Assembly: GCF_006345805.1 (NCBI RefSeq)
Contig: NC_043002.1
Location: 52,886,001-52,950,000, forward strand
Direction of reading: 5' to 3'
DNA length: 64,000 bases
Origin: Octopus sinensis
Lineage: Eukaryota
Of this stretch, positions 1,105 through 44,386 are shown piece after piece. Under the pieces are notes generated by a model. The model made no database searches. It saw only the letters and a program-made list of their open reading frames with translations, and was not told the origin of the DNA. Within the stretch, counting starts at the first letter, position 1; each line of letters begins with the position of its first letter. The position numbers and the translations under genes are program-made.

Positions 1105-1204
1105 CTGCATTGACTGTTATGGCCTCAATGAACTGTTCTCTCCAGGAAGAAGTGCTAACGACAAGAGATAAGTTAGCTTTCTTTAGTAACTTGTCAACCA
1201 CACT
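1105..1204 (-). CDS. NCX: Na+/Ca2+ exchanger (SLC8/NCX) constitutive exon, CBD2 C-terminus: SVVDKLLKKANLSLVVSTSSWREQFIEAITVNA(G/E)
   Basis: Acceptor atttccttttatcttttcag|AGT, donor GCAG|gtcagt; 100 nt, phase 0 to 1. The peptide matches the conserved NCX motif (vertebrate NCX1 STVDKLIKKTNLALVVGTNSWREQFIEAITVSAG, from memory). Confidence 0.97.
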
Positions 1205-4564: not shown

Positions 4565-4686
4565 CTTGAATTCTGTGCTCTCAGTTATGTGAACTGTAAT
4601 CTTGATATTTTCACCACGTCTCGGTTTACCAAGTTCCACCAATACAGGGTCATCTTCCTCCTGCTGTACATTTTCAGAACTACTAC
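4565..4686 (-). CDS. NCX: NCX constitutive exon: (G)SSSENVQQEEDDPVLVELGKPRRGENIKITVHITESTEFK
   Basis: Acceptor ttttctgtctcttttag|GT, donor CAAG|gtcagt; 122 nt, phase 1 to 0; splices in frame to 1105-1204. Matches NCX1 IAEMGRPILGEHTKLEVIIEESYEFK and squid NCX DDDPVLAELGKPRRGENIKITVHI as recalled. Confidence 0.97.
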
Positions 4687-7520: not shown

Positions 7521-9337
7521 CTGAGATTAATGCTGGTATATTAATACTAAAATCACAGCATCTATGAAGCTGCTATGACTGAATGGATTACAGAATCTGT
7601 TAACTATATCAACAGGATGCTGGGATTGATTATTGACTAATATTGAATAGGCTATAGCACTTAAGAAATTTTCATTGTGCTGTGTAAAGGCCGATATTAC
7701 AGGCTACATTTAACACAACTGAAAGAAATAAAACAAAAATAAAGCACCACTCCTACCAGACAATTAAATGGTAAATAGCAGAGAGGAAATAGTTTTATGA
7801 TCCTATAAGTTTACACAAATCACTGCTGAACCATCTGCAATCCATGCTAGCAGGATTTTCATTGTACCTTGCTTTGTTTTGTTTTTGTTGCATAAAAATG
7901 CTCTGCAAAGGGTGCTTGACAGTACGCGTTAGTAACATTAGTTAAGAACAGTTTCATGAGAAGAGAAGAGCAGGCTAGAATTATAACTGATTGATTTAAC
8001 TGTAATAATGAATCATTCATTAATGGAATATATTCAGATGTTTTCATAAAATAATAATAATAATAATAATAACAATAACAGTGATAATAATAATCCTTTC
8101 TACTATAGACACAAGGCCTAAAATTTAGCGGGAGGGACTAGTTGATTACATCGAACCCAGTGTTTTACTGGTACTTAATTTGTCAACCCCGAAAGGATGA
8201 AAGGCAAAGTTGACCACAGCGGAATTTGAACTCAGGACGTAGCGATGGGCGAAATGCCACTAAGCATTTTGCCCAGCATGCTAACAATTCTGCTAGCTTA
8301 CTGCCTTCACTAATAATAATAATAGTAATAATCATGATCATAATCATGATGATGATGATGATGATCATTATGATGATGATGATGATGATAGTAACCACAA
8401 AAATAATATTAATAAGAAGCAGAAGAAGAACAACAACAAATAAACTGAAAGGAAAATCCACTAAGTTGTTTGCCTACTAATACCAGCAGAGCAACATATA
8501 TATATACTCACTAATTTTTACTGTCTTTTAAGACAAACAGACACACAGACAAATGCTAGACGAAAAATATGTCTCTTCTTTGTGCTTACTTTCTTCTTTT
8601 TCATTTTTTGTTCTTTGTTTTGTCTACATGTATAACCTTGAAGTTGCATTAGTGTTGAAGAAATTAAGAACACATTTATCGATCATCTGAGACTGAATCA
8701 GGCCACAATAATAATAATGATAATAATAATAATAAAAATAATAATAATAATAATAGTGAAAAATCTACTCTACATAAAAACCAATCAGCGAGTAAAGAGG
8801 GACAGGAAGCTGGAACACTGTTGATCAGTGCAAAGCGCTGGTAAGGCCACTTGATGAAAAAAATTAAAAATTATACATAAAGAAATAGCAAAAGGCAAAA
8901 TGTTTTCAAAAAAATTAGCCAAAAAGAAAGGCAATCTGAAGTATATTATTAAGGAGAAACAGAAGCAGACAAACTGTTGGTATAAAAAAAAAAAGGAAAG
9001 AAAAAGAAAAAGTGGAAAACTATTTAATAGAACATGTACATTTGTATTGTTAATGAGTAGAAAATGAAGCCTTATGTAAAAACCATACAGAACATATGAT
9101 TGAATAAATGAATAAGTTAAGGGATATATAGACACAGACATAGCTGTGTGATTATTGAGAAGCTTGCTTTGCAAACACATGGTTTCAGGTTCAATCCCAC
9201 TGTGTGTGGAATTCTATCATATACACATGTACATGTGTGTGTGTGCATGTGTATATAGTTAGCTGTAACTTGATGCAATGAAATGTTCTTTGATGATCCA
9301 TTGTAATTAAGCATCTAAATGCACTCAGAACACTTAC

Positions 9338-9842: not shown

Positions 9843-11760
9843 TTGTATGTATGTATGTATGCATGCATGCATGTGTATGCTTGTTTGTGTGTCTGTCTGC
9901 ATTGTCTGACAACTGATATTGGTTCGTTTAATAATTTAGCGGTTCAGTAAAGTGAGTACCAGACTTTCAAAACATAGGTACTAAGGTTAATTTGTTTGAC
10001 TAAACTGTTTAAAGCAGTGCCCTACTTGGATTACTGAAGCAAATCAAAGATATGATATACCAAATGACAAGATGGTCATGGCAAAAATGCTTTTGGCAAT
10101 AGAGCAGCGCCATCAAGGCTAAGCTTTGGATTAAACAATAAACTGCTGTTCATGTCATATTTGTAGCAGAATTAGAGAAATTATTAACGAACAGTTAAAA
10201 AAAAAAGTTTAAATTCATTAAACCATATTTGTCCTCCTTAGGACATAAATGGATTTATTATGAGCCAATGAGTAAGCTTCTTCCAACATGGAAAATACCA
10301 GTCAACTCTCTTTTAATTTGCAGCAAATCAAATTTAATACAAAAAAAAAAAAGGACACACAGGGTAGCTTTAGATGCAGTGTGCTTGTAAATAAGAGATG
10401 GTAACAATTGAAATGTTTTTCATCATAAGTCTACTCTTTCATCATTTTCCCCAATGAGAATTGCTATGGCAGATAACACAAAGGTTGTATTGTACATGGA
10501 TTTGTGTGCAGAAATGTTCAAATGTTTAAGATGTATACACTCCCATTCCAAATATTTTCTCCAGGAATAGCATCATGTTTTCAGAATACCCATGTTCCTA
10601 AAAATATATATGCTTGTTGTGTATCTCATTTATCAAATAGCAAAAAGACCTGTACGAGAAAAAGGTTAAAAGACTGTGTAGGTATCTTTATGTTTGCACT
10701 CAACAAAAGTTACTCCCTATGCTGTTGTCACTCCTGTTAACAAATCACCTACTTTCATGTTTTCAAAGATTTGTGAAATAAGAGATGATCCCTTATGAAA
10801 GTAAAAAGCTAAAGATAGCAGCAGGAAGGGATTCCAGCTGCCCAGCTATAAAACAATGCTTCAATGGTATATTTGTGTAACCCGTGCTAGCATTAGAAAA
10901 TGAACATAAAATGAAATTTTAATTCAAAATTTTTATTATCCTTAATTTCTGAATGAGAGTAGAGAAGTGTAAAAACTGTTATGTGAAAGCTTTACATGGA
11001 GAGAAACTGTATTTAAATGAAAGATATTTCAGCTGTTTACAATATTTTATGGTTTTACTTTCTGTATTTGCTAGCATTTTTGAAATAATGTTTCCCACAT
11101 TTATGGTGCTTTCTGCTGCCACTGATGAAATAGAAACACAAGCATATACTTTGATGAACATGTTGCCTCTTAGAACTATAATATCAGTATGTGATGCAAG
11201 TAAAGTGTATGTGTGTGTACGCACATGTTGTCAAATGGTTAAGTTAACTTCAGAACCATGAGGTCTCAATGTTTGATCTCAGAGCACAGCATCTTGGGCA
11301 AATGTCATTGTTTTTCTTATAGCCATGGGTAGACTCATAACTGAGCAGATGGAAAGTGTATAGAAGCCTGTCAGATACACTCTATTCGTGATTCAAAGTA
11401 CAATCTTGTCACACAATGTGTCATGCAGATTCTGTCTAAGAATTATCTTAATGATACAAATAACTATGGAATACTCAGCCACTTACATATAATTCAAGTG
11501 ACTCAAACGAATCCCCATCATTGAAATCAGCAGAAATCTATTCTTCTATCTATATATAACTATTTTCTAGGCCTGAAATTTAACTGGCAGGGACTAGTTG
11601 ATTACATCGACCTCAGTGTTTCACTGGTACTTAATTTATCGACCCCGAATAGATGAAAGACATAGTCGACCTTGGCAGAATTTGAACTCAGAATGTAGCA
11701 ACGGGTGAAATGCTGCGAGCATTTTGTCCAGTGTGCTAACAATTCTGCCAGCTTTCCACT

Positions 11761-11801
<41 letters not shown>

Positions 11802-13009: not shown

Positions 13010-13192
13010 CTGATGCATGGTGCATAGTTGCTAAAGAAAAGTTGCTATCACTTGACTGGTGAATTGGCTGTTTCTCTTTCTCCTCTCTATCTGCATGCAT
13101 ATAACTTGATGATGGAAAAGTTTCCAGTGCTGTACTTAACCTATCATCAGAGCTGGTTTGAGATATTTTTCGAAAAAAATGAGATATGGTAC
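13010..13192 (-). CDS. NCX: Putative NCX cassette exon, paralogue 3 (183 nt): GTISHFFRKISQTSSDDRLSTALETFPSSSYMHADREEKEKQPIHQSSDSNFSLATMHHAS|G
   Basis: Acceptor tgtgttccattctag|GT ACC, donor GCA TCA G|gtcagt; length divisible by 3, phase 1/1, stop-free in the NCX frame; shares N- and C-terminal motifs with 18003-18194 and 28587-28757. Confidence 0.78.
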
Positions 13193-15139
13193 CTAGAATG
13201 GAACACATGACATATATTGACACACCAATATCATTAAGCTCAAGTTTTAAAATGAAATAATAGTGCAGGGCTGCTCATTCCAGAAAAATGTGATGCCATG
13301 TATGAAAAAAGCATTTCAAAATTTTTGGTCTAATAACAAACAGCTACCGATAATTTTCACCAATGTGAATAGAAATTTTTGTATAAATACAATTACTAAG
13401 GAAAACAAGTTTAAAAAAAAAAATACTAGTTGCTTTTACTTATAACCAAAACATTTATTTAGTGAAACTATTTTTTTAAAAAACTCCTACGAAGTATATA
13501 ACTGAAAATTATATATTCATCTTATAAGGATATTTTGAATAGATATTTGAATATCAGTGTTCGGTGTATATGGAGCAGATTCCTCTAAAATAATATAAGC
13601 TGGAAGAATTCAAACAAGAACTAATAGCTTTCACAAAGCATAACAAAAGCTTCAGACCATTTTCTAAAGAATTGTCAGCTATCATGCTGTGCTTCATATT
13701 AACTGACTTGACTGATTAATTCAATAAGATTTTGGATAATTTTCAAAAGGTAAGAATAGTGAAAAGAATACTTTTTGTTTTGTTTTGGCTTTTTTTTTTT
13801 ATTTGAGATATGGCAATTGAATTATTTTCAATGCCATATGAAATAGTTTGCATGACATTGTAGTTTAGCTGGTCACTCGTTTCAGAATACTTGGCATCAA
13901 TATACATTTTTAAGATAGATATATGGAAAAATAGAATATTGAACTCTTAATGATAGTGAAGACGACTGAAACAATACAGGCTTCAGTATTATTCTATTCT
14001 CAAATATTGGTTTCAAATTTTGGTACAAAGCCAGTAAGTATGGAGAAGCTCAGTCAATTAGATCAACCCCAGTGCTCAAGTGGTACTTATTTTATTGACT
14101 CCAAAATGATGAAAAGCAAAGTCAACCTCAGTGGGATTTGAACTCAGAATGCAATGATTCAGCATTTTGCCCAGGATGCAAACAATTCTGCCATCTTGCC
14201 CTTTTACTGTTCCCAAATATTGTCATCATCAATGTAAAAGCATTTTTACAATATTTTTTTCTTATACCTAGCTTTGCCAAAACAATATTACAAAGATCTA
14301 GAACAGTTTGGTTATTTCATTCTTTTTTCCATAATGTCATTTGTTGCAATCTACAAGAATCATAATAGTTTGTGGAAAGTTTCATTTCTAAGTGTGATAG
14401 ATGGTAGAGTTGTCAAGATGTTGGAGAATATACCCTGTGTTAATTAATTACATCTTTCAATGTTCTGAGTTCAAATCATGTTGGGGTTAAGTAAGTTTTC
14501 ATCTTGCCAAGGGTCAACAAAGCAAGTACCACTTGGTATACAATCAGTTGTTATCTGCCCACAAAAGTATCAGTGGGACTGAGCATTCAACAGATGCCCC
14601 ACATCACCAAAAGATCACTCAACTGGTTATTGATCTAAACTGGAGCATCAAGTCATCATCATTATCGTTTAATGTCCGTTTTCCAAGCTGGCATAGGTTG
14701 AATGGTCTGACAGGAGCTGGAATCACCAAAGAGCTGTCTAGGCTTCAACTGTCCGTTTTGGCATGGTTTCTATGGCTTGATGCCCTTCTTAATGCCAATC
14801 CTTTACAAAGCGTGCTGGGTACTTTTTATATAACACTAGCATGAGTGCATTTTATGTGGCACTGGCACAAAACAGTAATGAACATAGGTCAGTCAATCAT
14901 AACGAACCCCAAAGCAAAGACAATTGGGTCATATTTAAAGACCAGCAGACTTATGTCATCAACTAAATATGGTATACAAACTGACATCTTAATGAAGACA
15001 AACCTTACTGTGACCTTAAACAACATACTTAACTCTGTCACAATCCAACAAGTGCTGTAACAATTGAAGAGTTTACACATCTACAAACCAACCAAAACGA
15101 CTCAGTATGAACAACAATGTGATAATTATATGATAATCA

Positions 15140-15440
15140 TCATCATCGTTTAATGTCCATTTTCCGTGCTAGCATTGGTTGGACGGTTCAACCGGGGCCT
15201 GAGAAGCCAGGAGGCTGCACCAGGCTCCAGTCTGATCTGGCAGTGTTTCTACAGCTGGATGCCCTTCCTAACTCTAACCACTCCGTGAGTGTAGTGGGTG
15301 CTTTTTACGTGCCAGGAGAGGCTGGCAACAGCCACGATCGGTTGGTGGTTTTTATGTGCCATCAACACGGAAACCAGTCAAGGCGGCGCTGGTATTGGCC
15401 ACATATGAATGGTGCTTTTTACGTGCCACCGGCTTACGTA
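15140..15440 (-). mobile_element. SINE family A copy
   Basis: Reverse complement of the family A core, with (atc)n tail at 15140. Confidence 0.85.
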
Positions 15441-16776
15441 CAACCATAAATGGCATAGATTATAATAAGTAACCTAATTCCAAGAGAAAACATTATAGAA
15501 ATTTTATATCTTATAAATCAAACATCACATAAGTCTTGTGCTGCCTTCTGTATTCTGTTTTAAATTACTTTCCATATTTCAAGCCAATGAGAGAGCATCT
15601 GCACAAGTGTTCAACCTACTAGAAACAATAGCCATATTTTCCTCCAACCATACCTTAGCATGTAAGAAAAAAGTGGGTGTGTGTGGGGGGGGGATGTGTC
15701 ACATCAGATAGCATAGTGCTTCATATACATAAAGGTAGTGGCTGGAACACCATTTATCATGATCCTAAATATTATGCTTTCTACAATAGTTTCCTTTAAG
15801 TCTTTTCTTTTGATAGATTCTCTCATTGTAAGGCTTGTTTAGCTGTTCTTCTTTCACTATGCCAACAAAGAAACCTCTATGTGGTTGCTTGGCCTGCAAA
15901 AAATAGCAGCCCAGTCTCTCTCATATCACACATTAGCATTTTCTTTTTTATGGACGCATTGGTAAAAGCAGTCATAGAATTACTGTAACAAAAGAAAAAG
16001 AAAGAAAGAAAGAAAAATGATAGGATGGAGATGGCTGAAAAACCTGTGACCATAGGTCAGCTCACTCAGGAATTATTCAGAGTTAGACCACCATCACCAC
16101 CACCTATACATATATCCATCATAATCAATGACTATGTGGATCAACCAGATATGTCTCTATGGTAATGTGCAAATGGATGGATAAATGCAGACATCTGCCA
16201 TTATTATCACACATTATATCATTGCTTTGCTTGTAAATTACTACTAATCTACAAAATAGTTGTTGACAGACAACAAGAATACACGCTAACTCACACAAAC
16301 CATTTTGACCTGGAGATAGCAACAAAAGGCATGTTTTTTCTTTTCTTTTGCGAGTTTTTTTTTCTTCTCTTTCCCTGATTTGGCTGGTGGAGTGGGATGC
16401 CCTCTCAGGCTAATTTGTTATCAGATGACATCAGTGCTCATGCAAAACATAGCAAGCTAAAGAGATATCTATAAATGCAAACAGTTTATGTAGTTTATCA
16501 ATTAGAAATAGAAAAATAGAAAAGAGGAGGAAATTAATTGCCAGAGACCAGACTTGTTATATAGACAATTGAAATGAATGTATGTGTGTGTGTGCATGCA
16601 CATGTGTACTAATGTATGTACACAAGAAAATGAGCAGCATGAAAAATTGCAGGCACATATGAGAATAAGTGCATTATTTGTGTATTAAGGCTACTGTTGG
16701 TTTCATGTTAAGGAAGTCCTCAACAATATTCAAGCCTATCACACAGAACATTGGTGTTTGTCTTCATTTTACATTA

Positions 16777-16824
<48 letters not shown>

Positions 16825-17149
16825 CAAAACGCACCCCTGTCCAGTGGACGGTGCTGAATCATATCTGCTGAATAAAAAGCAATCAGTGTTTTCTTTTCAT
16901 TCGAAAAAAAATTAAGCATGCCTTTATTTCAATAAAATATTTTGGTTTTGTTAAATGAAGTTAAGGCAAAAAAAATACTTCATGAGAAACCAAATAGTCT
17001 TTCCTTCATTCATGCCAAGTTTGAAGAAAATATCACTTTTGCATCTTACATTTTTGGTCTCTTAAATATACTGCTTTTTGTGGCATTATTTCAAGCCAGC
17101 TGGCTTTTTTTGCACAAACTGCATGTGCATTTTTCTCACATATGCATAG

Positions 17150-17372
17150 TATCGATTGCAACAGCTGATGTACTTGCGTGTACAAATGCACATTCCCACG
17201 GCTTTATCAATCGCATTCTCACTTGGAATTGATTTTTGTAATTTTTTCTAGACTTATACACGCCCTGATACCATCGGTATCTACATATCAAATTTGAGCG
17301 CAATTGGATGGAGGATGCCCGAGATCCTAGAAGTCACAGACAGACAGACAGAACGGTTTTATATAATAGATA
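17150..17372 (+). mobile_element. 3' part of a non-autonomous Helitron-like (Lep1/HINE-type) element
   Basis: ...tatcaaatttgagcgcaattggatg...(acag)n microsatellite then ttttatataatagat end, the typical layout of Lep1-like elements. Confidence 0.55.
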
Positions 17373-17579
17373 ATCATAATGCATGATATCTTCAAACACC
17401 AACCCTACAATGTCATTCTAACAATAAAACAATTACATCATTAAAATCTTGAAAGTACAAGATAATGCATGATTGATTCAAAACAATGTGAATAAATAAG
17501 CTTTAAATTAGGCAGAGTAATCTGAGTGCTAAAAGGTTTAAGGACTCAAAAGCTTACAGTTGGGATAAGGTAAAAAAGT

Positions 17580-17900
17580 AAAGACCCCCTTTAGTCATGA
17601 ATGACCATGAGATTGCACCTAGGAACTAGGAAGTTACCCTCCGAGGTACAAGTCCGGGCAAGATTGTTTATAGAAGAACAGCAGTCACCCATGCATACCA
17701 GCCTCCCCTCCCCATCCCATCAATATTATCCAAGGAAAAGACAAAGGCTGATACAGCTTGGCCACAGTGATGTCACAACTCATTTTCTACAGCTGAGTGA
17801 ACTGGAGCAACACGAAATAAAGTGTCCTGCTCAAAAACACAACACACAACCTGGTCCGGGAATTGAACTCACTACTTCATGATTAGAACCCAGTATTCTA
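17580..17900 (-). mobile_element. SINE family D variant
   Basis: Collinear with 45725-46058 (gttaccctcc..caagtc.gggcaa..ttgtttat.gaaga.cagcagtc.cccat); tRNA-like head at the right end. Confidence 0.8.
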
Positions 17901-18002
17901 TGTTTGCTATGTTTTGTGTCTCTCTCTGAATACTGAACTGCTGAAGACAATCTAAGGAATTAAATGATGACGGCTATCAGTGCAGCTGGTGCGTATTCTG
18001 AC

Positions 18003-18194
18003 CTGACATTCTCTGATGCACGGGGGCAGTATTAGAAGTAGAAGGAGATTTAGGCATTGAAGCCTTTCCACTAGAGTGTTTGTCTTTCTCGGATTCGTTT
18101 TGCATCAAACTGACTTTGGCGGAGTTTAGCGTCTCAATTGTATCCTCGACAAAGCTGCTTTGAGAGATTTTGCGTAAAAATGTTGACATTGTGC
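18003..18194 (-). CDS. NCX: Putative NCX cassette exon, paralogue 2 (192 nt): GTMSTFLRKISQSSFVEDTIETLNSAKVSLMQNESEKDKHSSGKASMPKSPSTSNTAPVHQRMS|G
   Basis: T-rich acceptor gttgttgttattttag|GC ACA, donor ATG TCA G|gtcaga; phase 1/1, open frame; GC/CpG content visibly above the flanking intron. Confidence 0.82.
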
Positions 18195-19529
18195 CTAAAA
18201 TAACAACAACAACAACATCAACAAAAATAATGATAATAAAAATAAAATAAACAAGACAAAATAAATAGTAGCAGCATGGAGCTGAGCTTCTGTTTCATGT
18301 GGTATGATGGTGCAGAGAAAGGATTTTCTATTGAAAGGAACAACACAATCAGTAATTATTTAGTAAATTGCTAACTGAACTGATACTGCTGCTGCTACTA
18401 CTACTACTACTACTGATGATGATGATGATGATGATAATAATAAACAATACAAAAAGCAAACAAATGATAAAACTGACAACAGAATTTATCAGTGTTCAAT
18501 ACATATAAAGTGAAAATCATTCAGTGTAGCTCATGTCACTGAAATAAATAAGATTTGATAATAATATTATTTTCATTGATTTTTTTTTTATACACTTTAT
18601 TTGGATTGCAGTTTTGTTAATTTTTATCGATTTCTTTTTTCTTCTTGTCATATTTTAACATTAAAGATTACTGTAGGCCAAAACTATACACTGTTTAAAT
18701 ATGTTAACAATAAGAATCCAAGATATTCTTCATAAATGAAATAAAAAATCAGAATGCCATACAAGAATACTTCTTCACTCAACAATGGCAAGGAAAGAAA
18801 TAACTAACTGTAGCTAATGAAATATTTCTTGAAAAAAGAGAGAGAGAGAAAAAAAAAGCAGTATCTAAATTTGGGTTCTTATACATGCAATTTATATCTG
18901 GAAAAGGGAAGTACAAAATTTAAAAAAAGGGATAGAATTTAGAGCAAGATACACATGCACACACAAACACATATGTATACAGATATATACACAGGTTTAT
19001 ATATGCATCACATATATTTGAAATTTAGGTATTTCTAATATAAATTTACAAAAAAAAAAAAAAAAGCCCAGAACTAAGAGACTAGTGAGTTCATTTAAAA
19101 AAAAAACTTCATTTACAAAGCAAACAATGGAAGTCATTATGCAGTCACACAACCTGCTAGAAAGAGCAGCAAAGTCCCTTTCAGATCACATTCTAACCCC
19201 TCTTAAAAATAGGAAGAACACTCATGATAATGCAGTTCTTGACCTTTTTCTCTCTCATTTTTTTAAGATTTGATAAATGAAGAAAAGAGTAAGGAAGGAC
19301 AACCCTCATGATATTTTCAATTTTCAGGGTGTGTGAGACTTGCAGGGGGAATGGTGGAAGTTATCTTCAGACTAAAAGCCTGGCCTGAATGCTTGAGATG
19401 GATTAGATTCTTTGAAAGACACCCACAAGCTAGGATGAATGTGTTGAAGTTGGCAATGGATTAAGTCTACAACCTGAAACAGAAATGGTTTTTTCAATGA
19501 GCGTCCACATTGTGCTCTTCCACCAAAAT

Positions 19530-19758
19530 TAATCCTTTAGCATTGAAACTGGCCATATCCAGCCAATATATTGTGCCTGTTTCATATTTAAACAAGACAG
19601 ATCCAGCCTCTCACACCTAGCCTCTAATATCATTCGAGAAATATACAATCACATCAATGAAATCTCAAAGCTACAAGATAATACAGGATTAATTTGTAAA
19701 CAATGTGAATAAATAAGGAATACAATAGATGGAGTAATCTGAATACTAAAGGATTAGT
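19530..19758. mobile_element. piggyBac-like MITE, family 2 (degenerate)
   Basis: Ends ttaatcctttagcatt ... aatactaaaggattag; related copies at 26022-26247 and 59762-60205. Confidence 0.6.
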
Positions 19759-20940
19759 ATACAAGACTTTAATTGACCTAAGGCTATAGTAGAAGACTCT
19801 TACCTGAGGGGCCCCCATGGTGGTAGCTGATATTGAACCTTAAACCATTTAGTTGTGAAGCAGGTATTTCAATTATGCAACCCTGCCTGTGTCTCCAAAA
19901 GACAGGATGAACAAGGCAAGAACAACTAGCTTTGATTATATGTATGCTCAATCAGAATTATCCTTGGGGTTAGCAACTTAATTTCCAACAAGAAATGTGA
20001 ATAGAAATGAGGATAAGTAAATTATTTGAAATTTCATCTTTTGACTAATCACAAAACTGAAACTTTTTCCTTCTTATGGAAAGTGTTGAGCTAGACTGAA
20101 TCACTGGAAATTATTTTATCGATCAAACTTTGCCCCAGAACTCAAACCTTAGATGAATGAATTTTAAAATAAACTTGAAACTGGGGTAGGTGGGAGAACT
20201 ACATAGAGCAATTCATGTAGTCCAGATCAATAAGTTTTTCAGTAGTCAGACATATCAATTGGTGTGGGGTGGGCAGAGAGGAATGAATTGTCATTAAAAT
20301 GTTATGTCTTCAGAGTCATTCTGATAAATGTCTAAAATTTTTCAAAAATAGTATTGATGTATCTAAATAAAAAAACGTCTAAGTTTTACTAGTTTGTCAA
20401 CCAATTTAATCTAAGAATACTTTGAAGTAAACAATTTCTTAGTGGAAGAGACATGATAGTAGTTTAACACACACATAAATATACACACCATTATATTTGA
20501 TTCTAGTATATTTTGTAATAATATTATTATACACATCATAAAGGAATTAAAGTGTCTTATTTGTACACCCCTAACCTAGTCACTACTATTACTAAGTAGT
20601 AAATAAAATACTATTATAGATAAACATAAGTAAACAAGCAATATGAGTGTATTTTAAGTGGTTATCATGGCAACTATAATGCAATTGTAAATGGGAATTA
20701 TTGACATAAAATCAAATATCTAACACCTGTAGAAGTCTGGGGAGTAGACAATGGCATTCCAGAACCAAAGACAGACATATAAAACTAAGAAATTATTTTC
20801 AGTCTAGCTTGTTTTTGCAGCCATGTGGTTTTGGGTTTGGTCCACTGCACAACACCTTGAGCAAGTGTCTTCTACTATAGTCCCGAGATCAACAAATGCT
20901 TTGTGAGTGAATTTGATAGAAGGAAACAGTGTTGGAGCCT

Positions 20941-20973
<33 letters not shown>

Positions 20974-20975
<2 letters not shown>

Positions 20976-21206
20976 GGCGGCGAGCTGGCAGACACGTTAG
21001 CATGCCGGGCAAAATGCATAGCCGTATTTCGTCTGCCGTTACGTTCTGAGTTCAAATTCCGCCAAGGTCGACTTTGCCTTTCATCCTTTCGGGGTCGATA
21101 AATTAAGTACCAGTTTGGCACTGGGGTTGATGTAATCGACTTAATCCCTTTGTCTGTCCTTGTTTGTTCCCTCTGTGTTTAGCCCCTTGTAGGTAGTAAA
21201 GAAATA
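20974..21206 (+). mobile_element. SINE family B, best-preserved copy
   Basis: Head ggcggcgagctggcagacacgttagc..ctgagttcaaattcc (A/B-box-like) plus central ctttgcctttcatcctttcggggtcgataaattaagtacc; high CpG retention suggests a young insertion. Confidence 0.85.
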
Positions 21207-21729
21207 TATATATATGGTAAATGAAAGACTGAAGATGGAATATACAAGAATTTATTATTAATCACGACAATTGTTTTGACACATCTAGTATCGATCCCTC
21301 ATGGGTGGGGCACTCAACAACTGGTTCAGGAGCATGTGTGTCTCATCGGGTGATAAATAGACACAACTCGTTAAAATAACAGTTCTGCAATGTATCCTCT
21401 CATTTCGTAGAAAGAAATGTAGTAGAACAAAGGAAATAGCTTCATTTACATTGAAGATCAAAAATAAAATCACAGATGCAAAAAAGAACACAATACAGTG
21501 AGAAAAGAATTGAAAATAACCGTTAACAAATATGGATGTATAAACACCCTTGAGCAAGCTGCATGGTGTATGTACACTCACTCATACAAGCATGTGCACA
21601 TGTGTTTGGTGCACTCATGATCACAAAGCAAGTTAAATATCTACTTGGTATTTATAAGAATGGAGAGGTTAAAACTAAACTTAATTCATCCATACTTTAA
21701 AGTAAATTATAACAGTTACTCAAATTCAT

Positions 21730-22112
21730 CCCCACTGCATTGTGAGAAAGTGCAATCATATGCATATAGGCATCTTGTGAGTCTTTCAGAAATTCTATTA
21801 ATGATCTTCTTGTTGATCCACAGAATAAACAGAGATTTCTTGTAGCAGAGATGGCATCTCCTGGAAATTATATTGTATGGTTATGCTGTACTTAATTTTA
21901 TCCTCCTTCAGTCATCATACAAAATCAGCCAAAGATGTTGAATGTCTCTTATTGATTGTCTTAAAGCTGGCAATATGGTTATGATAACGATTCTTAAATG
22001 AATCAGCTGTCTGCCCAATGTAAGCATATGGACCTCTCCTTGTGTGCACAGTACATTTATATACAAGACTTGTATTCACACAAAGGTTCATCAATTTGAT
22101 TTTTCTCTGCAT
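21730..22112 (-). mobile_element. Penelope-like element GIY-YIG endonuclease remnant
   Basis: SLVYKCTV..AYIGQTADSFKNRYHNHIASFKTINKRHSTSLADFV followed by RRCHLCYKKSLFILWINKKIINRISE..RC: the VY..YIG, RxxxH and CxLC..K motifs of PLE endonucleases. Confidence 0.85.
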
Positions 22113-22749
22113 GAGAATTTATCATATTTATTTGTATATAAGGTAGTTCTAACTATATTACTGTGTTAGCTGTATCGTAAGCATTTCTACTCATACAATT
22201 TGGCTGTAATTGGTGTTTTTCATTGTGGCTTATATCTCCTTCATTGGTATTTAGATGTGCATGTTTGCTAGATCCAGTAGGTGGGTTATTGAACCTTTGT
22301 TGCATTTAACTATTGTTTATGTGGTGCATAAGCTACTCTAAATTAGCAGAATTAGTGTAGGAGACCTTCATGGTGTTCGATTAAAAATACATACATATAT
22401 ACATACATACACAAACACACACATGTGTGTGTGTATGTATACATTTAAATATATTATCAACATAACTGACTTAACAATAATTCAAAATGTGTGTGTGTGT
22501 GTGTATCTTTGTGTTAATGTTTGTCTTCCCAAATCACTTGACAACTAGGTTTATTTAATTAATTATTTGTCTCTGTAACTTACCAGTTTGGCAAAAGAGA
22601 CTGGTAGAATAAATACCAGACTTAAGAAAAAAAAAGTAGTAAGATTGATTTGTTCAACTAAACTCTTCAAGGCAGTCCTCCAGCATGGCTGCAGTCCAAT
22701 GAGTGAAACAAGTAAGAGTTAAAAGAAAATTATGTAACTATTACACACT

Positions 22750-23185
22750 ACATTATTTACATTTGACAAATATTTGTCCTCATCTTGTTTGTTGTTAATA
22801 ATAGACAGAGAACACCACTGGAAAATACAAAAACTAAAAGAAGCAGCACATATGCTAGGACACAACAACCTCCTAAGCAGACTAAGTGCAGATATGAGCA
22901 GCATATGGGAACCAGTATTAAGGAAGGATAGAAAAATATTAGATTTATAAGCCCTAAAATTCACTCTATAATTGCCCACAGGCATATGGCGTAGTGGTTA
23001 AGATTCCGAGTTCGATTCCAAGCAGTGACCTGAATAATAATAACATCGAAAAATATCTTAGGAATGAGAACCCAGGTTTGATATTTCTCCAAGACACCTG
23101 ATGAAGGCTGGAGGATATAACAACAAACAAGATGAGGAAAAATATCCATCAAATGTAAATAATGTACATAATTCCTCTTCTCTTA
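22750..23185 (+). mobile_element. Second Penelope-like 3' fragment with inverted termini, tRNA-like head and hammerhead core relic
   Basis: IIDREHHWKIQKLKEAAHMLGHNNLLSRLSADMSSIWEPVL* (PLE C-terminus); 48-bp inverted repeat at 22750-22797 and 23118-23165; A-box 22987-22997, B-box 23008-23019; CTGATGA at 23098-23104. Confidence 0.7.
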
Positions 23186-23594
23186 AATATAGAACTGTAC
23201 TACACACTACAGTTTGTCTTTGATAGTTTGCTGATAGAAGCAATGTGATGGTATTGTGGAAGATAGACAAAGAACAGAGTTAACAGTTGAGAAGTTATAT
23301 TCTAACAAAGAAAGCATTTCTATTACAAATGAATTCTCAAGAAAGTATAGTGGAGCCATAATCCACAGGAGAGTGAACAGAGGAAGCAAACCCAGTAAGT
23401 ACTTCTGAAGAGACGACAATGAAGACTAAAATTTTAAACTTATTATGTAGCAGACCACAAAGAATATAGTTGTATTAAATTATTTGTAAATCTGCATGGC
23501 ATTTGCATGTCAAGCGTTGGTCTGATATTAACCAGACAAAACTTTGTCAGTGTGAAAGACGATTTCTCTGGTGAATACACACATTTATATATAT

Positions 23595-24004
23595 TTAGGC
23601 ATGGGTGTGAGGTTAAGAAGTTTGCTTTCTAACTGCATTGCTCCAGGTTCAACCCCACTGAGTGGCATGTTGGGTAAATGTATCCCACAGTAACTCTGGG
23701 CTGACCAAAGCTTTGTGAGTAGATTTGGTAGATGAAAACTGAAAGAAGCCCATCATAAATACATATTTTTTTTACTCTTTTAGTTGTTTCAGTCATTTGA
23801 CTGCAGCCATGCTGGAGCACAATCTCATAGGGTCTTTTCTTTAGTCGAAGAAATCAACCCCGAGACTTATTCTTTGTAAGCCTAGTACTTATTCTATTGG
23901 ACTCTTTTGCCAAACTGCTAAGTTACAGGGACATAAATACACCAACATTGGTTATCAAGTGATGGTGGGGGGACAAACACAGGCATAAAGACACACTCAC
24001 ATAA

Positions 24005-24044
<40 letters not shown>

Positions 24045-24445
24045 GACTCGTGGCCGACTCGTGGCTGATGCCAGCACCGCCTTGACTGGCTTCCGTGCCG
24101 GTGGCACATAAAATACACCAATCCGACCGTGGCCGTTGCCAGCCTTGCCTGGCACCTGTGCAGGTGGCACGTAAAAAGCACCCACTACACTCACGGAGTG
24201 GTTGGCGTTAGGAAGGGCATCCAGCTGTAGAAACATTGCCAGATAAGACTGGAGCCTGGTGCAGCCTTCTGGCTTCCCAGATCCCCAGTCAAACCGTCCA
24301 ACCCATGCTTGCATGGAGAACGGACGTTAAACGATGATGATGATGATGATGACAGGCTTCTTTCAATTTCCATCTACCAAACCCACACACAAGGCTTTGG
24401 TTGCCCCAAGGCTATAGTGGAAGATACTTACCCAATGCAGTGTGT
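23595..24445. mobile_element. Nested SINE cluster: family C 5' half (+), family C copy (-) with family A inserted in its TA tract
   Basis: Family C head at 23595-23760; minus copy 23770-24445 split by family A at 24040-24352. Confidence 0.75.
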
Positions 24446-25099
24446 GAGTGTGTGTGTGCATTGAACTCAAAATGTAAAGATGGACAAAATGCTGCTAAGC
24501 ATTTTTCCCACAATACTAATGATTTACCTTTTGTTCAATATTAAAAAGAAAAGACAAAGTTTGATTGCACAACTATGCACATGATCTAGATGCTTTTGGC
24601 AATGAAGCTCTGAGATATCTAACAAAAATACAGTACAACGACATGTATCATTTGATAATGATTTATCTGACTCACGAATAAGTTTTATTTATATAATTTT
24701 TGATGTTGTTTTCTTTTCCAATAGTAATAGTTGTCATCGTCATTTTCCACCTCAGTTTGATATATAAACCAAGTTAAGATTCAAATGAAGCATGTTATCC
24801 TTCACTCAAGCTGTTAAAACATTTATTTTAATTACATTGCATTATCTTAATTCTTTTAGCATTTTCAATTAGTTTAAACTGTATGATTACAGTCATGCAA
24901 GAGCGCGTGTTATTTCAGGTGTTATGCAGTTAATTTGGCTGCTTGATATGCTAACAGATGTAAACCAGCTACAAAACGGGTGGTACCTAAGATATTGGAC
25001 ATGAAATAAATATCAGCAAAATCACCATCAGATTTCAGATATTAAAAATTAAACATAATATGATACAATTTCAAATGAGAATACTAAGATCTAAATCAT

Positions 25100-25640
25100 T
25101 GCCCATCTTGTTTGCGGCACACGGAGGAGTTTAAATATCTTGGGACCATATTCATAAGTGATGTGTGGCAGGAAGCTCAAGTGGATGCTAAACTTGCAGT
25201 GCTGACACAGTACTGTGCCAACTCCAACATCCAATTCTTAGAAGAGGAGAGAGAGAGAGAGGTTGGTAAGGAAAGCAGTTTCATGTTTATCCTCATGAAT
25301 ATTGGGGATTGATTAAGTAAGTATAGTCATGAGATTCTCTTGGAGTGAAAAGCTCAGAGAGTTTCTCCGGGTTAAGCCACTACTTCTATGCACTGAGAGG
25401 TCACAGCTCCAGTATTACGACATGTGACCAGAATGTTGCAAGAAAGAATCACAAGAAGAATTCTTCAAGACAAGTCAACTAACAAGAGACCTAGGGTAGA
25501 CCACAAATAACATGGTTGGATAATATTCATAGTCTCCGTTGGTTAAACTTGGGAATCCAGCTGATTCTGATAGGACCTATGGAAGAAGCGCTGAGAATTC
25601 TACTCTCATGACTCTCCCAGGAATGGTGGGTAGAGAAAAC
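25100..25640 (+). mobile_element. RTE-clade LINE (Rex3/Expander-like) ORF C-terminal remnant
   Basis: HTEEFKYLGTIF...EKLREFLRVKPLLLCTERSQLQ..HVTRM..ERITRRILQDKSTNKRPR.RPQITWLDNIHSL; FKYLG and RWxGHxxRM...RPRGRP motifs, with frameshifts. Confidence 0.8.
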
Positions 25641-27029
25641 TAATAGATGGATAGCTTGGAATTGTTTAAAGTGTTATCATCATAGTTCTACTGAAGCAGA
25701 ATAACATTCATCATCACCATCAACATCATCATTTAATGGCAGTTGTCCATGGTGGTATGGGTTGGATGGTTTGACCAGGACTGAGGAGTTGTACTGGACT
25801 CCAGTCTGATTTGGCATGGTTTCTATGGCTGGATGCCCTTCCTAACACTAATCACTCCAAGAGTGTAATGAGTGCTTCTTACGTGTCACTGGCATGGGTG
25901 CCAGTTGATAACTTTTTTTCTATTTATGCTGGTATCTCAGGAAAATATTTTATCCTGCTAATGATTAAAAATATTAACGTATAATGTTACAAAGAGAATA
26001 TTGTGCCTGCTTACATTGTCTAATTCTTTAGCATTTAAACCTGCCTTATCTGGCCAAAATATTCTACCTATCTTATGTTCAAACAGGCCAGATCTGGTTT
26101 CTAACACCAACCCTATAATATTATTCTAAAAATTAACAATTACCTCATTGAAATCTTAAAACTAAGATATAATGCATGATTAATTCATAACAATGTGAAT
26201 AAATAAGTATTACTCTGCACAGAATAATCTGAAAGCTAAAGAGTTAAAGCATTTCTTATATATGGTATTCTTTCAATACATTTTCAACAGAATGAATAAC
26301 TCAAATAAAAATGGACCAATAGATTATCATGAACAATTCTCAGTGATTTAGTAGCGCTTTCATTTCTGACATAAACATAAAAATAATTTCAGAGTTGTGC
26401 TTGTCTTACAAGTTACTTGATCTGAAACCAGGTGTCAAACCAAGAAATAATGATGCCATTTACTAACACATAAGGCTGTTGAATTCACTTCAAATTTATC
26501 TATTCAATTATTTTCCTTGCACGACTGCAACCTGGTCACTGGTAAAGTTCCAACATTGATAGAGGAACTGTGTTAGTGATGACATAGCAATTAAGTGATG
26601 AAAAGTTTGATATCTCATGGGATAAATTTAAAGCAAATTTAATAGCTTTGTGTTATTAAGTGGTTCTTCCACAACATAGTTGATAAAAATAATAGGTAAG
26701 AGCTTCCAAGGTAGACGAGACATCAAGCGGATGACAAAAAGTGCAGTTTTCAACGATGCTGTCTTCTAAGACTGCAGTTTCAGTATTATCTACATGGAAC
26801 TTGCACCATTTCAAAAATCAAATGTTTCAAGAAAAATGCAATTTAAAAGAAACTATGTATTCATGGTTCCTTATAAACTGCTAACCATTTTGTAGTTTGT
26901 TTATCTGAATAAGTGAAAGTGTATGACCTAGTGGTTAGGGTATTGCATTCAAAATAGCAAGGTCGTGGTTTCAATTACCAGACAGGGTGGTATATTTTGT
27001 TTTGGAGAAAAAACATTTCATTTCATGGT

Positions 27030-27305
27030 GTGCTGGACTGGCTCCTGTGCAGGTGGCACATAAAAAGCACCATTTGAGCATGGCTGTTGCCAGTACCGCC
27101 TGACTGGCCCTTGTGCTGGTGGCACGTGAAAGCACCCACTACACTCTCGGAGTGGTTGGCGTTAGGAAGGGCATCCAGCTGTAAAAACTCTGCCAGATCA
27201 GATTGGAATCTGGTGCAGCCAGACCTCAGTCAAATTGTCCAACCCATGCTAGCATGGAAAGCAGACGTTAAACAATGATGATGATGATGATGATGATGAT
27301 GATGC
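27030..27305 (+). mobile_element. SINE family A copy
   Basis: Family A core and (gat)n tail. Confidence 0.85.
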
Positions 27306-28586
27306 TGCAATCCACTCTGCTCTTAATGAGTAACCCTGTGAAACACTGGAATCCCATTCAAGGTGAATACTGTGATTGAGCTCACTTATATGTAGTGGAA
27401 ACCAAATAGCAGGTTTCTATGAGTCCTAGGACTGAATCACTAATGTCCAGTGACTGACAACGATGATGTCAATGATGATGACAATGTTCATAATGATGAT
27501 GACTATGATGATGATTAAAAGCAATTATACACTAACAACCTGGTACTATCACAAAATAGAAGAACAGTGAGTGTAACAGTATAAACGCATTTTGAAGGAC
27601 TGACATGAGTCATGGTGTGTATGTAACAAACATAAAATATTAAGTTACATTAAGTTAAAAAAAATATTCATAAACCTTTTAGATAAAAGAAACTATTTAA
27701 TCATATTTCATTAAGTTAAACCTAAATTTGTGTGTGTGTGAGAGTGTATCAACACCTGGATATCAAAGTAAAACAATTATTTCTAACACAGTAAAATAAA
27801 CTGATAAACCAAGTTAATAAAATACTTGCTAGACATAAAAAAAAAAAAAAAAAAAAAAAACGATGCAGTTTCAGATATCAACATCGTTAATGAGAGGAGA
27901 TAGCTTTGCTTTTATATGGGAACGATAGTTAGGTTAAGTGAAGAAGATAGCTAGAATTATAAAAAGGGTGAGTAATCAATTAAAATATAAATACAAGTAT
28001 ATAAAATATTACATGAAACAATATAATTGATTTGCATACTGACTATACTATGTACACAGCAGAGTAGGCAAGGAGTGGTTACTTGAAAGCTTTACTATTA
28101 CTAAGATTATAGATTTAGACACTCATATGCTATAGGAGTATCTTGCTGAAAGGGTCGGTATTAAATAACAGAACTGGAGGGGTATTAGTAGTATAAATTA
28201 GAAGGGCACTCGCAAGTCTAGCAAAAAAAATTTAAAAAGCCGGGTGATGGTGAGGGCATAAAGAGCTCTCAAATGCATACCATTTACATTATAGAAACAC
28301 ACATATATTGCTAGGTGCTGAAAAATTGACTTCTATGTGGGGCCCACTTAAGCAAAACACACAGATAAGGCCGAGTCATTTCAAATTAAGTAAGGAGCAA
28401 TAAAGTTCTACATAATTTGTTCATTCATTTTATTATAAAAGCTATATATATATTTTTTTTCAACCTGTTGGGCTAACGCATTACTTCTCAATAGTGCAAG
28501 ACGCTTGGAACACACGAAAATGGTGGAGGTTTCATTCCTAAAAATCTACAAGACTGGTGACTGCTTTTGTGACAGTTATGACTGAC

Positions 28587-28757
28587 CTGACATACGGTGT
28601 CGTATGGGTTCATTGCTTGCAGATGTAGAACTGCCAAAATTCTGTCTTTCGATAAGAGGAATCATATTTGAGTAGGGTGTCCCAGAATGTACCGAGACAT
28701 TTGTCTCATCCAGAAAACAGCTGGCATCACATTCTTCAAAATAGTGTGATATAGAAC
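28587..28757 (-). CDS. NCX: Putative NCX cassette exon, paralogue 1 (171 nt): GSISHYFEECDASCFLDETNVSVHSGTPYSNMIPLIERQNFGSSTSASNEPIRHRMS|G
   Basis: Acceptor gcatgctatttttag|GT TCT, donor ATG TCA G|gtcagt; phase 1/1, open frame; ends RMS|G like paralogue 2. Confidence 0.8.
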
Positions 28758-30349
28758 CTAAAAATAGCATGCAACAGCTGAAATATGGAGGGAAAATAAG
28801 AATGGTAACATAGGCACAAGACCATAACTTTGTGGGAAGAGAAGTATGATTGGCAATATTGAACCCAAAACTTGAGCGGTACTTACTTTATAATAAAATG
28901 TAGAAGTGTATATCGGTATCTACTTCATACAGTGATGTAACTTTACACATTTTTTGAAGCTTGATGAATTAAATATCATAAGACCTTAAAAGCTAGTAAA
29001 GACACTTCTTCGTGCTTCATTACATATGTAGGAGAAATATGAGCATGAAATAGTGGATAGGGTGTTGCACTCACAATCATGGGACCATGAGTTTGATTCC
29101 CAGACAGACTGGGTGGTGCACTGTATTCTTCAACATCTGACATGCAGGGAGTGAGCCTATGTGTATCTGTGAGTGTGGTCATTTGGCAAGAAATTGCAGA
29201 ACCAACTTCCTTTGATCAACAGACAATCATTAGGAAAAATATTAGAAATTTATAAAGAGAAAGATGTGATATTATGCTTTTTCCTAAGGGCATGAATAAA
29301 CATATACAGAATGAAATTATTAAAGCGGGGAAAAGAAATTCTATAATGGACTTAGTTTGCCGAGAGCAAACCTTACCTTTAATAATATATCCTTAGATAA
29401 TATAGATATGAATACATCCATACAATTACTATATTATGATTGCACTAATATTATAAATGATTAAAACTGTATTATGAATTATTAATATAATGCTATGAAC
29501 AATTGTAATAAAATGACTAGTCTCATATTAATATTTGTTTAAGCTGGTTAATAAAGAGGTTAATACATTAAATACATCAGAATTTTTAGTGAACAAACCT
29601 GAATTGAGCAAATATATACACCATAAACAAGAGGAGTAAATAGATTTCTATGATTAACACTCATAAACACTGAAGCTTTATTATGTCTTACAATTATAAC
29701 TACAACGAAGCAATAAAAAGTTCCTGTTCTCACAAAAATATGAGTCTAAATAAACTCATTTCTCTCTATCTCGTTTGTGTGTGTGTGTAAACAATGGCTG
29801 TTTTCAAGTGTTACTGTTTTTCAGAAGTTTTATTTTATTTCTTTTTCCATATTATTGTACAAGTTCCATCCAGTATATTTCGAATGGTGAAGTTCCAAAA
29901 TCCATTATCAACATTTCTAATTCCCTCTTGGTCTCCCCTTCAGGATGAAGTAATGTTGGCATGTGTTACCAATGTGTTTAGTGTAGACATTACAAGAGGA
30001 ATTTGAATTTTTGACAGCTAAATTTATACTCCTATCCATCAAGATACTAATCTAGTACTTCCTGTTCATATATGAGCGGTTAAAGTCAACCTTGACAACA
30101 TTTGAACCTTGAATTTAAGGAGCTATATTTTTGAACTTAGCTCTTCTGCTGCTCAACAGATTTTGCCAGTCTACTACTGTAATTGTATTGTAATCATGCT
30201 GGATTAAAAGTTATAAGTGGCAAGCAACTGATCCTTTTGTAGCTATGAATTCAAGTCTTACCAAAGTCACATTCCTGAAGAGTTCATAGAATAAGAGACA
30301 GTTTTAGACAGGAACAAGTGATAACAAAAGTACAGATGTGCTAAGATAG

Positions 30350-36304: not shown

Positions 36305-36452
36305 ACCATTCATATATATATATATACATATATATATATATCATATATACATACATATATATATATAATACATATATAATACATACATATATATAACATA
36401 TATACATACATATATATATATATATATACATACATATTATATATATATATAT

Positions 36453-36504
<52 letters not shown>

Positions 36505-44365: not shown

Positions 44366-44386
44366 CTGAGTGGGCAGAGTCAGTAT
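44366..44386 (-). CDS. Candidate 21-nt NCX micro-exon: (D)TDSAHS|G
   Basis: Strong acceptor ttgtttatgctttgtttttatag|AT, donor CTCAG|gtaaat; phase 1/1, in frame, no stop. Confidence 0.5.

What the first reader, a model, noticed from the sequence alone, without database searches (positions are those of the whole stretch)
13010..28757. Array of three paralogous in-frame cassette exons inside the CBD2 loop of a cephalopod Na+/Ca2+ exchanger
Seen: three minus-strand exons (28587-28757, 18003-18194, 13010-13192; 171, 192 and 183 nt) upstream of the GSSSENVQQEEDD exon. All are multiples of 3, phase 1/1 (matching that exon's phase-1 acceptor), stop-free, and end in TCA G|gtcag. The peptides align: GSISHYF/GTMSTFL/GTISHFF starts; RKISQ in two; SCFLDET~SSFVEDT; EKDK~EKEK; IRHRMS/VHQRMS/MHHAS ends. 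Known: vertebrate NCX1 tunes Ca2+/Na+ regulation through mutually exclusive exons A/B and small phase-1 cassettes C-F at this position. Inference: tandem exon duplication has built a switchable set of ~60-aa Ser-rich inserts, far larger than the vertebrate cassettes and absent from the squid NCX sequence as I recall it. The inserts could be mutually exclusive or combinatorial. I am not aware of a description of this array.
Basis: partly seen in the sequence, partly recalled or inferred. Interest (0 to 1): 0.88.

Follow-up and report, generated by a model that had tools for sequence, protein, structure and literature searches.

The report
Alternative loop exons in octopus Na/Ca exchanger
The three segments are real coding exons of an octopus sodium/calcium exchanger gene, related by duplication and able to lengthen its calcium-sensing loop by up to 189 residues, but public automatic gene models already contain them, so the finding is a correct re-discovery.

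Summary
The three minus-strand segments are 171, 192 and 183 nt. Each is phase 1/1, is stop-free only in that frame, and has AG acceptors and G|GTCAG donors.

They are real exons. Their translation, with exactly these borders, is 100% identical to Octopus sinensis RefSeq models XP_036359785.1 and XP_036359786.1. It is 93-95% identical to O. bimaculoides XP_052824690.1.

The exons sit between the two halves of the second Calx-beta domain (CBD2). This is where vertebrate NCX1 carries cassette exons C-F.

O. bimaculoides isoform models include all of them (X1), only a microexon (X2) or none (X3). So they are alternative and can be co-included. They are not mutually exclusive.

Paralogy is solid for B and C. 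For A it rests on the two exon ends, and no chance candidate in the window matches those. No cassette overlaps a dispersed repeat. No protein outside Octopus carries them.

I found no paper describing the array, but the exons are already annotated. Function is inferred: a disordered, Ser-rich, kinase-site-bearing insert that tunes Ca2+/Na+ regulation.

Interest is modest.

The parts
44366..44386 (-). Microexon M. It is 21 nt, phase 1/1, and encodes DTDSAHS. The acceptor is tttttatag| and the donor is CAG|gtaaat.
   Evidence: Searches show the sequence. It is present as DTDSAHS in O. sinensis XP_036359785.1 (residues 614-620) and as DTESAHS in O. bimaculoides X1 and X2. It is absent from X3.
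28587..28757 (-). Cassette exon A. It is 171 nt, phase 1/1 and encodes 57 aa (GSISHYFEECDASCFLDE...EPIRHRMS). The donor is CAG|gtcagt. A UGCAUG hexamer lies 16 nt upstream of the acceptor.
   Evidence: It is 100% identical to O. sinensis X1 residues 621-677 and 93% identical to O. bimaculoides X1. It overlaps no repeat. Its anchored ends match B/C, unlike all 1341 null candidates.
18003..18194 (-). Cassette exon B. It is 192 nt, phase 1/1 and encodes 64 aa (GTMSTFLRKISQSS...APVHQRMS). It carries an RKIS basophilic-kinase motif. The donor is CAG|gtcaga.
   Evidence: It is 100% identical to O. sinensis X1 residues 678-741 and 95% identical to O. bimaculoides. It is paralogous to C: local score 54 against a shuffle mean of 26.7, z 5.3. 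DNA identity is 75% over the first 52 nt.
13010..13192 (-). Cassette exon C. It is 183 nt, phase 1/1 and encodes 61 aa (GTISHFFRKISQTSS...ATMHHAS). It carries an RKIS motif. The donor is CAG|gtcagt.
   Evidence: It is 100% identical to O. sinensis X1 residues 742-802. It is 95% identical to O. bimaculoides, with one in-frame codion-sized (one-codon) indel. O. bimaculoides X1 reads on past this donor (GQFKVKF, then stop), which matches the window's intron (GQFKVKFWKI*).
4565..4686 (-). Constitutive exon D. It is 122 nt with a phase-1 acceptor and ends in phase 0. It encodes GSSSENVQQEEDDPVLVELGKPRRGENIKITVHITESTEFK, which supplies the C-terminal helix and last beta-strand of CBD2.
   Evidence: Together with exon E it aligns to human NCX1 (8sgi) residues 665-731 (domain i-E-value 5e-17). 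D+E is 100% identical to O. bimaculoides.
1105..1204 (-). Constitutive exon E. It is 100 nt and encodes SVVDKLLKKANLSLVVSTSSWREQFIEAITVNA. The donor is CAG|gtcagt.

Best explanation
The window covers part of an intron-rich stretch of at least 59 kb in the Na+/Ca2+ exchanger (NCX/SLC8A) gene of Octopus sinensis or a near-identical octopus.

Four in-frame, phase-1/1 alternative exons lie between the exon that ends CBD2 strand F (outside the window) and the exon that supplies the CBD2 helix and strand G. They are a 21-nt microexon M and three cassettes A, B and C of 57-64 codons. A, B and C arose by tandem exon duplication.

All four are multiples of three and stop-free, so any combination keeps the frame. 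Annotated models show three patterns: all four exons, M alone, and none. Included together they add 189 residues to the FG loop of CBD2. This is the unstructured loop where vertebrate NCX1 inserts its short cassettes C-F.

Inferred mechanism. The inserts are Ser/Thr-rich (25-31%), hydrophilic and probably mostly disordered, possibly with helical N-terminal halves. They carry conserved basophilic-kinase motifs: RKIS in B and C, and R-x-R-M-S / Q-R-M-S at the ends of A and B. They most likely change how CBD1 and CBD2 couple and add phosphorylation-dependent control of exchanger activity in particular tissues.

Shown here: exon reality, borders, position, paralogy, conservation, and alternative inclusion at the level of gene models. 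Inferred: tissue specificity, disorder, phosphorylation and the effect on transport.
For: - Borders and frame.
- Identity to O. sinensis XP_036359785.1/XP_036359786.1, covering M, A, B, C, D and E contiguously at residues 614-876.
- Orthologues in O. bimaculoides XP_052824690.1 at 93-95% identity, with frame and junctions kept. For comparison, the constitutive N-terminal part is 97.4% identical.
- Skipping models X2 (M only) and X3 (none) in O. bimaculoides, and a cuttlefish model with LVKKPT|GSSSGSVV.
- Position. The first CBD2 half aligns to NCX1 8sgi 511-608 and exons D/E to 665-731, so the insert replaces residues 609-664. The Pfam Calx-beta match of the O. sinensis protein stops at residue 613, profile position 104 of 119.
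- Paralogy.
- Not a repeat and not found outside Octopus: where among 225 significant hits only the Octopus cluster covers the cassette part.
- Composition and kinase motifs, conserved in both species.
- Role of the vertebrate cassettes in the FG loop: review PMC9820601.
Against: - No read-level junction evidence could be examined. The support is automatic RefSeq (Gnomon) models.
- Both O. sinensis models include all four exons, so skipping is not shown in the window's own species.
- All O. bimaculoides isoforms are C-terminally truncated models, which lowers their value.
- A's similarity to B/C is weak in its interior (hhalign probability 26%).
- The structure prediction was uninformative. 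It used a single sequence and gave mean pLDDT 37; even CBD2 did not fold.
- Phosphorylation and any functional effect are untested.
Confidence: 0.78

Rival explanations
1. The four exons are constitutive in octopus NCX. The functional full-length mRNA always contains them. The skipping forms in O. bimaculoides would then be artefacts of truncated or incomplete gene models.
For: Both O. sinensis RefSeq isoforms, which are the only full-length models seen, contain M+A+B+C. They differ only by one residue after exon E. The O. bimaculoides X1-X4 models are all truncated before the C-terminal membrane domain.
Against: O. bimaculoides X2 and X3 join LVKKPA (with or without M) directly and in frame to exon D. 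A cuttlefish model and the cloned squid cDNA have the same short junction. From general knowledge of the NCBI pipeline, not checked here: extra isoforms are normally issued only with transcript support.
Confidence: 0.15
2. A, B and C form a mutually exclusive exon cluster, with exactly one used per transcript, like NCX1 exons A/B or insect Dscam clusters.
For: They are tandem paralogues of similar length and identical phase.
Against: Three independent models in two species contain A, B and C in series. All are multiples of three, so co-inclusion is not penalised by a frameshift. The introns between them are 4.8-10.4 kb, so no steric block applies (coordinates).
Confidence: 0.03
3. The segments are not genuine protein-coding exons. 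They would be chance ORFs, exonised repeats or ab initio prediction artefacts.
For: Stop-free AG..GT segments are common in this AT-rich DNA: 298 candidates of at least 150 nt on the minus strand. No reads were examined.
Against: Conservation is 93-95% at the amino-acid level, with frame, junctions and motifs intact across two species. The single indel is exactly one codon. Exon-like GC. No overlap with any of about 50 dispersed repeat copies. Anchored-end paralogy is absent from 1341 null candidates.
Confidence: 0.03

Closest known systems
Vertebrate NCX1 (SLC8A1) cassette exons C, D, E and F in the CBD2 FG loop
   Same: They occupy the same place in the protein: between the strand-F exon and the exon encoding the FG-loop helix and strand G. 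They are in-frame cassettes that can be combined. They lie in an unstructured loop next to the CBD1 Ca3-Ca4 sites and the interdomain linker, where added cassettes slow Ca2+ dissociation and rigidify the linker (PMC9820601).
   Different: There is no detectable sequence similarity. The octopus cassettes have 57-64 codons each, 189 residues in all. The vertebrate set is about 47 residues: NCX-SQ1 lacks 47 aa relative to NCX1.1, which uses A and C-F (PMC2217150). The octopus cassettes are paralogues of each other, are Ser-rich and carry RKIS motifs.
Squid NCX-SQ1 (Loligo opalescens cDNA U93214)
   Same: It is a cephalopod orthologue, and its flanking sequence is highly conserved. Its regulation by ATP- and kinase-dependent processes is long known from physiology (PMC2217150).
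   Different: The cloned neuronal form has no insert at this position. Nine RT-PCR clones from optic lobe and stellate ganglion showed no variants. Whether squid genomes hold homologous cassettes could not be tested here.
Drosophila CALX1.1/CALX1.2 splice variants
   Same: It is an invertebrate NCX with alternative splicing in the CBD2 FG loop that changes the response to regulatory Ca2+ (PMC9820601).
   Different: The CALX variants differ by only five residues. There is no duplicated cassette array.
RefSeq models XP_036359785.1/XP_036359786.1 (O. sinensis) and XP_052824690.1 to XP_052824693.1 (O. bimaculoides)
   Same: These are the same exons with the same borders. The O. sinensis models are 100% identical to the window's translation.
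   Different: They are automatic annotation only. They say nothing about paralogy, position in CBD2 or function. I found no paper describing them.

Membership tests
NCX/SLC8A alternative-splicing region (cassette exons in the CBD2 FG loop) | The flanking exons encode the two halves of the second Calx-beta domain of an NCX. | tested here: met
   residues upstream of the insert align to NCX1 8sgi 511-608, and exons D/E align to 665-731; the O. sinensis protein hits Calx-beta, Na_Ca_ex and Na_Ca_ex_C, and the second Calx-beta match ends at residue 613, directly before M.
NCX/SLC8A alternative-splicing region (cassette exons in the CBD2 FG loop) | The exons are symmetric and in-frame, so inclusion or skipping preserves the reading frame. 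| tested here: met
   lengths are 21, 171, 192 and 183 nt. All are phase 1/1 and stop-free.
NCX/SLC8A alternative-splicing region (cassette exons in the CBD2 FG loop) | Transcripts exist both with and without the exons. | tested here: inconclusive
   One search shows inclusion in O. sinensis X1/X2 and O. bimaculoides X1, and skipping in O. bimaculoides X2 (A-C) and X3 (M and A-C). These are gene models. No reads could be inspected, and the skipping forms come from the sister species.
NCX/SLC8A alternative-splicing region (cassette exons in the CBD2 FG loop) | Sequence homology to vertebrate exons C-F. | tested here: not met
   no PDB NCX chain aligns to the insert; no non-Octopus protein matches the cassette part; no Pfam family matches.
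Mutually exclusive tandem exon cluster | Only one member of the cluster is present in any mature transcript. | tested here: not met
   A, B and C occur in series in three models from two species.
Mutually exclusive tandem exon cluster | The members are tandem paralogues of like length and phase. | tested here: met
Mutually exclusive tandem exon cluster | There is a mechanism that enforces exclusivity: a frameshift on double inclusion, steric hindrance, or competing RNA pairing. | tested here: not met
   All lengths are multiples of 3 and the introns are 4.8-10.4 kb. Competing RNA structures were not searched for.
Exonised transposable element or dispersed repeat | The exon sequence matches other copies dispersed in the genome. 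| tested here: not met
   repeat coverage is zero in all six exons, although about 50 repeat copies lie in the window; the only cassette-to-window matches are cassette to cassette.

The most novel reading that the evidence does not exclude
Octopods have evolved, by tandem exon duplication, a lineage-specific modular phospho-regulatory insert in the Ca2+-sensing loop of their Na+/Ca2+ exchanger. Each module has an RKIS-type kinase site and an R-M-S tail. Tissue-specific choice among up to 16 in-frame combinations would set how strongly kinases and Ca2+ control the exchanger. This would give a molecular handle on the kinase- and ATP-dependent regulation long seen in cephalopod exchangers, which the cloned short squid isoform does not explain.
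Probability: 0.2. Interest if true: 0.6.

Novelty: new variant of a known kind. Interest (0 to 1): 0.33.

Why it matters
Alternative splicing in the CBD2 loop is the main way vertebrates diversify NCX regulation. An independent and much larger cassette set at the same spot in octopus would be a case of convergent use of this loop as a regulatory insertion site.

It would also offer natural long-loop variants for testing how loop length and phosphorylation affect CBD1-CBD2 coupling.

In practice the exons are already in RefSeq. What this work adds is the interpretation: paralogy, exact structural position, the microexon, and the conserved kinase motifs. It does not add a new sequence feature.

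Tried and rejected
- The first word-indexed protein search with the concatenated cassettes found only a cuttlefish-like C-terminal fragment. That tool returned only proteins of up to about 380 aa, so it could not see the full-length octopus models. The exhaustive representative search found them.
- Looking for the upstream CBD2 exon, or a second exon-A/B-like copy, in the window found nothing. A later tBLASTn with the O. sinensis upstream-exon peptide does not add to this, because I printed only the first 25 output lines and that query's hits were cut off. The upstream exon most likely lies beyond position 64000.
- The O. bimaculoides alternative tail AEKSNAEDKK... is not in the window.
- Fetching O. 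bimaculoides or cuttlefish genomic DNA for dN/dS and presence/absence failed. The gene range was too long in one case and not on record in the other.
- The Logan contig L001 (SRR8281690) retains the intron upstream of exon D, so it is uninformative about cassettes.
- Single-sequence AlphaFold gave mean pLDDT 37 and did not fold even CBD2. Its helices over the N-terminal halves of B and C (pLDDT about 50-58) are only a hint.
- A nematode NCX (Dirofilaria immitis) has a Ser-rich insert of about 100 aa at the same place, with 'FKQRMSS'. It is not similar to the octopus cassettes (BLASTP E 33).
- Rbfox-type UGCAUG hexamers occur near A and inside C, but the count is too low to argue from.
- Literature searches for octopus NCX splicing found nothing relevant.
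Full report
**1. Observation**

I read the three segments on the minus strand and translated them.
- A, 28587-28757, is 171 nt.
- B, 18003-18194, is 192 nt.
- C, 13010-13192, is 183 nt.

Each follows an AG and precedes a GT. Each is a multiple of three. Each is open only in the frame required by a phase-1 acceptor; the other two frames carry 1-5 stops each. All three end in TCA G|gtcag.

The peptides are as quoted:
- A: GSISHYFEECDASCFLDETNV...EPIRHRMS
- B: GTMSTFLRKISQSSFVEDTIE...APVHQRMS
- C: GTISHFFRKISQTSSDDRLST...ATMHHAS

The downstream exon starts at 4686 as stated. It ends at 4565, so it is 122 nt, phase 1 to phase 0. The next exon is 1105-1204.

**2. Is it more than chance?**

The window has 33.8% GC. 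The cassettes have 38-43%, like the undoubted exons D and E (41%). Their flanks have 30-36%.

I listed all AG..GT, phase-1/1, stop-free segments of at least 150 nt. There are 298 on the minus strand and 193 on the plus strand. Only B and C also have an acceptor tract of at least 70% pyrimidine, a final exon G and a GTNAG donor. A narrowly fails the tract cut-off.

None of the exons overlaps any of the roughly 50 dispersed repeat copies in the window.

**3. What it is**

The window holds only two conventional NCX exons, D and E. The upstream CBD2 exon was not found in it.

An exhaustive HMMER search with A+B+C+D+E against 1.84 billion representative proteins gave one outstanding hit. P0002 scored E 2e-101, at 94% identity over query residues 1-184. 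It is XP_052824690.1, sodium/calcium exchanger 3 isoform X1 of Octopus bimaculoides. The gene model spans 315 kb.

Its cluster also holds O. sinensis XP_036359785.1 and XP_036359786.1, of 1092 and 1091 aa. Both read ...DEPFLVKKPA-DTDSAHS-[A]-[B]-[C]-GSSSENVQQEEDD.... The window is therefore from O. sinensis or a near-identical octopus, and the exons are already annotated.

**4. A fourth member**

The seven residues DTDSAHS between the upstream exon and A are encoded by a 21-nt phase-1/1 microexon at 44366-44386 on the minus strand. Its context is tttttatag|ATACTGACTCTGCCCACTCAG|gtaaat. It also ends in TCA G.

**5. Alternative use**

The O. bimaculoides models differ exactly here.
- X1 has M+A+B+C and then reads into the intron after C. 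Its tail GQFKVKF matches the window's GQFKVKFWKI*.
- X2 has M joined directly to D.
- X3 joins LVKKPA directly to D.

A cuttlefish model (Acanthosepion pharaonis CAE1255970.1) has LVKKPT|GSSSGSVV. The cloned squid NCX-SQ1 lacks 47 aa here relative to NCX1.1. Nine RT-PCR clones from squid neural tissue showed no variants (PMC2217150).

So the exons are alternative at the level of gene models, and they can be co-included. They are not mutually exclusive. Only all-in, M-only and none are documented. Intermediate combinations are possible, because every exon is a multiple of three, but they have not been seen.

**6. Position in the protein**

Against solved structures, the first CBD2 half aligns to human NCX1 (8sgi) residues 511-608. 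Exons D/E align to residues 665-731. The octopus insert therefore replaces residues 609-664, the segment that the vertebrate cassette exons encode.

In the O. sinensis protein the second Pfam Calx-beta match ends at residue 613, at profile position 104 of 119. M begins at residue 614. The cassette region itself matches no Pfam family and no solved structure.

**7. Paralogy**

B against C is clear.
- The local BLOSUM62 score is 54, against a shuffle mean of 26.7 (z 5.3, 0 of 2000 shuffles).
- The DNA is 75% identical over the first 52 nt.

A is much more diverged.
- Shuffle p is 0.0015-0.011 against B and 0.02-0.04 against C.
- hhalign P is 7e-4 over the first 21 columns, with probability 26%.

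A's two ends nevertheless match at fixed positions: 4 of 7 residues at the N-terminus and 3 of 5 at the C-terminus. None of 1341 null AG..GT in-frame candidates from both strands reaches either value.

Tandem exon duplication is the best reading. B and C are the younger pair and A is older or faster-evolving.

**8. Conservation**

Identity between O. sinensis and O. bimaculoides:

| Part | Identity |
|---|---|
| A | 93% |
| B | 95% |
| C | 95%, plus one exact-codon indel |
| M | 6 of 7 residues |
| Constitutive N-terminal part (612 aligned residues) | 97.4% |
| D+E | 100% |

Frames, junction residues, the RKIS motifs and the R-M-S tails are kept. This argues for purifying selection. It could not be turned into dN/dS because no second-species DNA was obtainable.

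**9. How it probably works (inference)**

The cassettes are 25-31% Ser+Thr and hydrophilic, with GRAVY of -0.5 to -0.9. They carry these motifs:
- RKIS in B and C (basophilic-kinase type, [RK][RK]x[ST])
- R-M-S at the ends of A and B
- an SP site in B
- several acidic-directed sites

In vertebrate NCX1 the cassettes lie in the unfolded part of the FG loop, next to the CBD1 Ca3-Ca4 sites and the interdomain linker. Adding cassettes raises CBD1 Ca2+ affinity and slows Ca2+ release (PMC9820601).

The most likely role of the octopus array is the same kind of tuning, with added kinase control. Squid exchanger physiology has long pointed to ATP- and kinase-dependent regulation, but the cloned squid form lacks these exons. 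No function was tested here, and the single-sequence structure model was uninformative.

**10. Novelty and verdict**

Three things change:
- The array has four members.
- Mutual exclusivity is excluded.
- The exons are already in RefSeq for two octopus species.

I found no paper on octopus NCX splicing.

This is a lineage-specific variant of a well-known kind, alternative cassettes in the NCX CBD2 loop. It is of modest interest until read-level and functional data exist.

Noticed in passing
window donors at 28586, 18002, 13009, 4564 and 1104 (minus strand); compare 44365: Five of the six donors in this stretch are G|GTCAG, with C at intron position +3. This includes the constitutive exons D and E. 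Only the microexon has GTAAAT. C at +3 is uncommon at animal donor sites (from general knowledge). I could not tell whether this is gene-specific or typical of octopus.
   Followed up: partly
window 28768-28773 and 13094-13099 (minus strand): A UGCAUG (Rbfox-type) hexamer lies 16 nt upstream of exon A's acceptor, and another lies inside exon C. There are 21 on the whole minus strand, so the local excess is weak.
   Followed up: partly
window 36312-38108 and 38769-39555: There is a degenerate (AT)n tract of about 1.8 kb. Next to it is a 384-bp unit repeated twice at 99% identity.
   Followed up: no
about 50 intervals across the window, e.g. 8046-8359, 11569-11801, 20970-21150, 41351-41573, 24061-24436, 15130-15433: Short dispersed repeat families of 150-400 bp, up to 12 copies each, fill the introns. 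No tRNA-like gene was detected by ARAGORN. None touches an exon.
   Followed up: partly
P0048 (Dirofilaria immitis MCP9262626.1), residues about 600-700: A nematode NCX has its own Ser-rich insert of about 100 aa at the same CBD2 loop position. It is not similar to the octopus cassettes. This loop seems to tolerate large inserts repeatedly.
   Followed up: yes
O. sinensis X1 versus X2 (P0155/P0156), just after exon E; outside the window: The two O. sinensis isoforms differ only by one residue (ITVNAEGDDD versus ITVNAGDDD). This looks like a NAGNAG-type alternative acceptor at the next exon.
   Followed up: no
tool behaviour: The word-indexed protein search listed only proteins of up to about 380 aa. 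It therefore missed the full-length octopus NCX models, which the exhaustive search found.
   Followed up: partly
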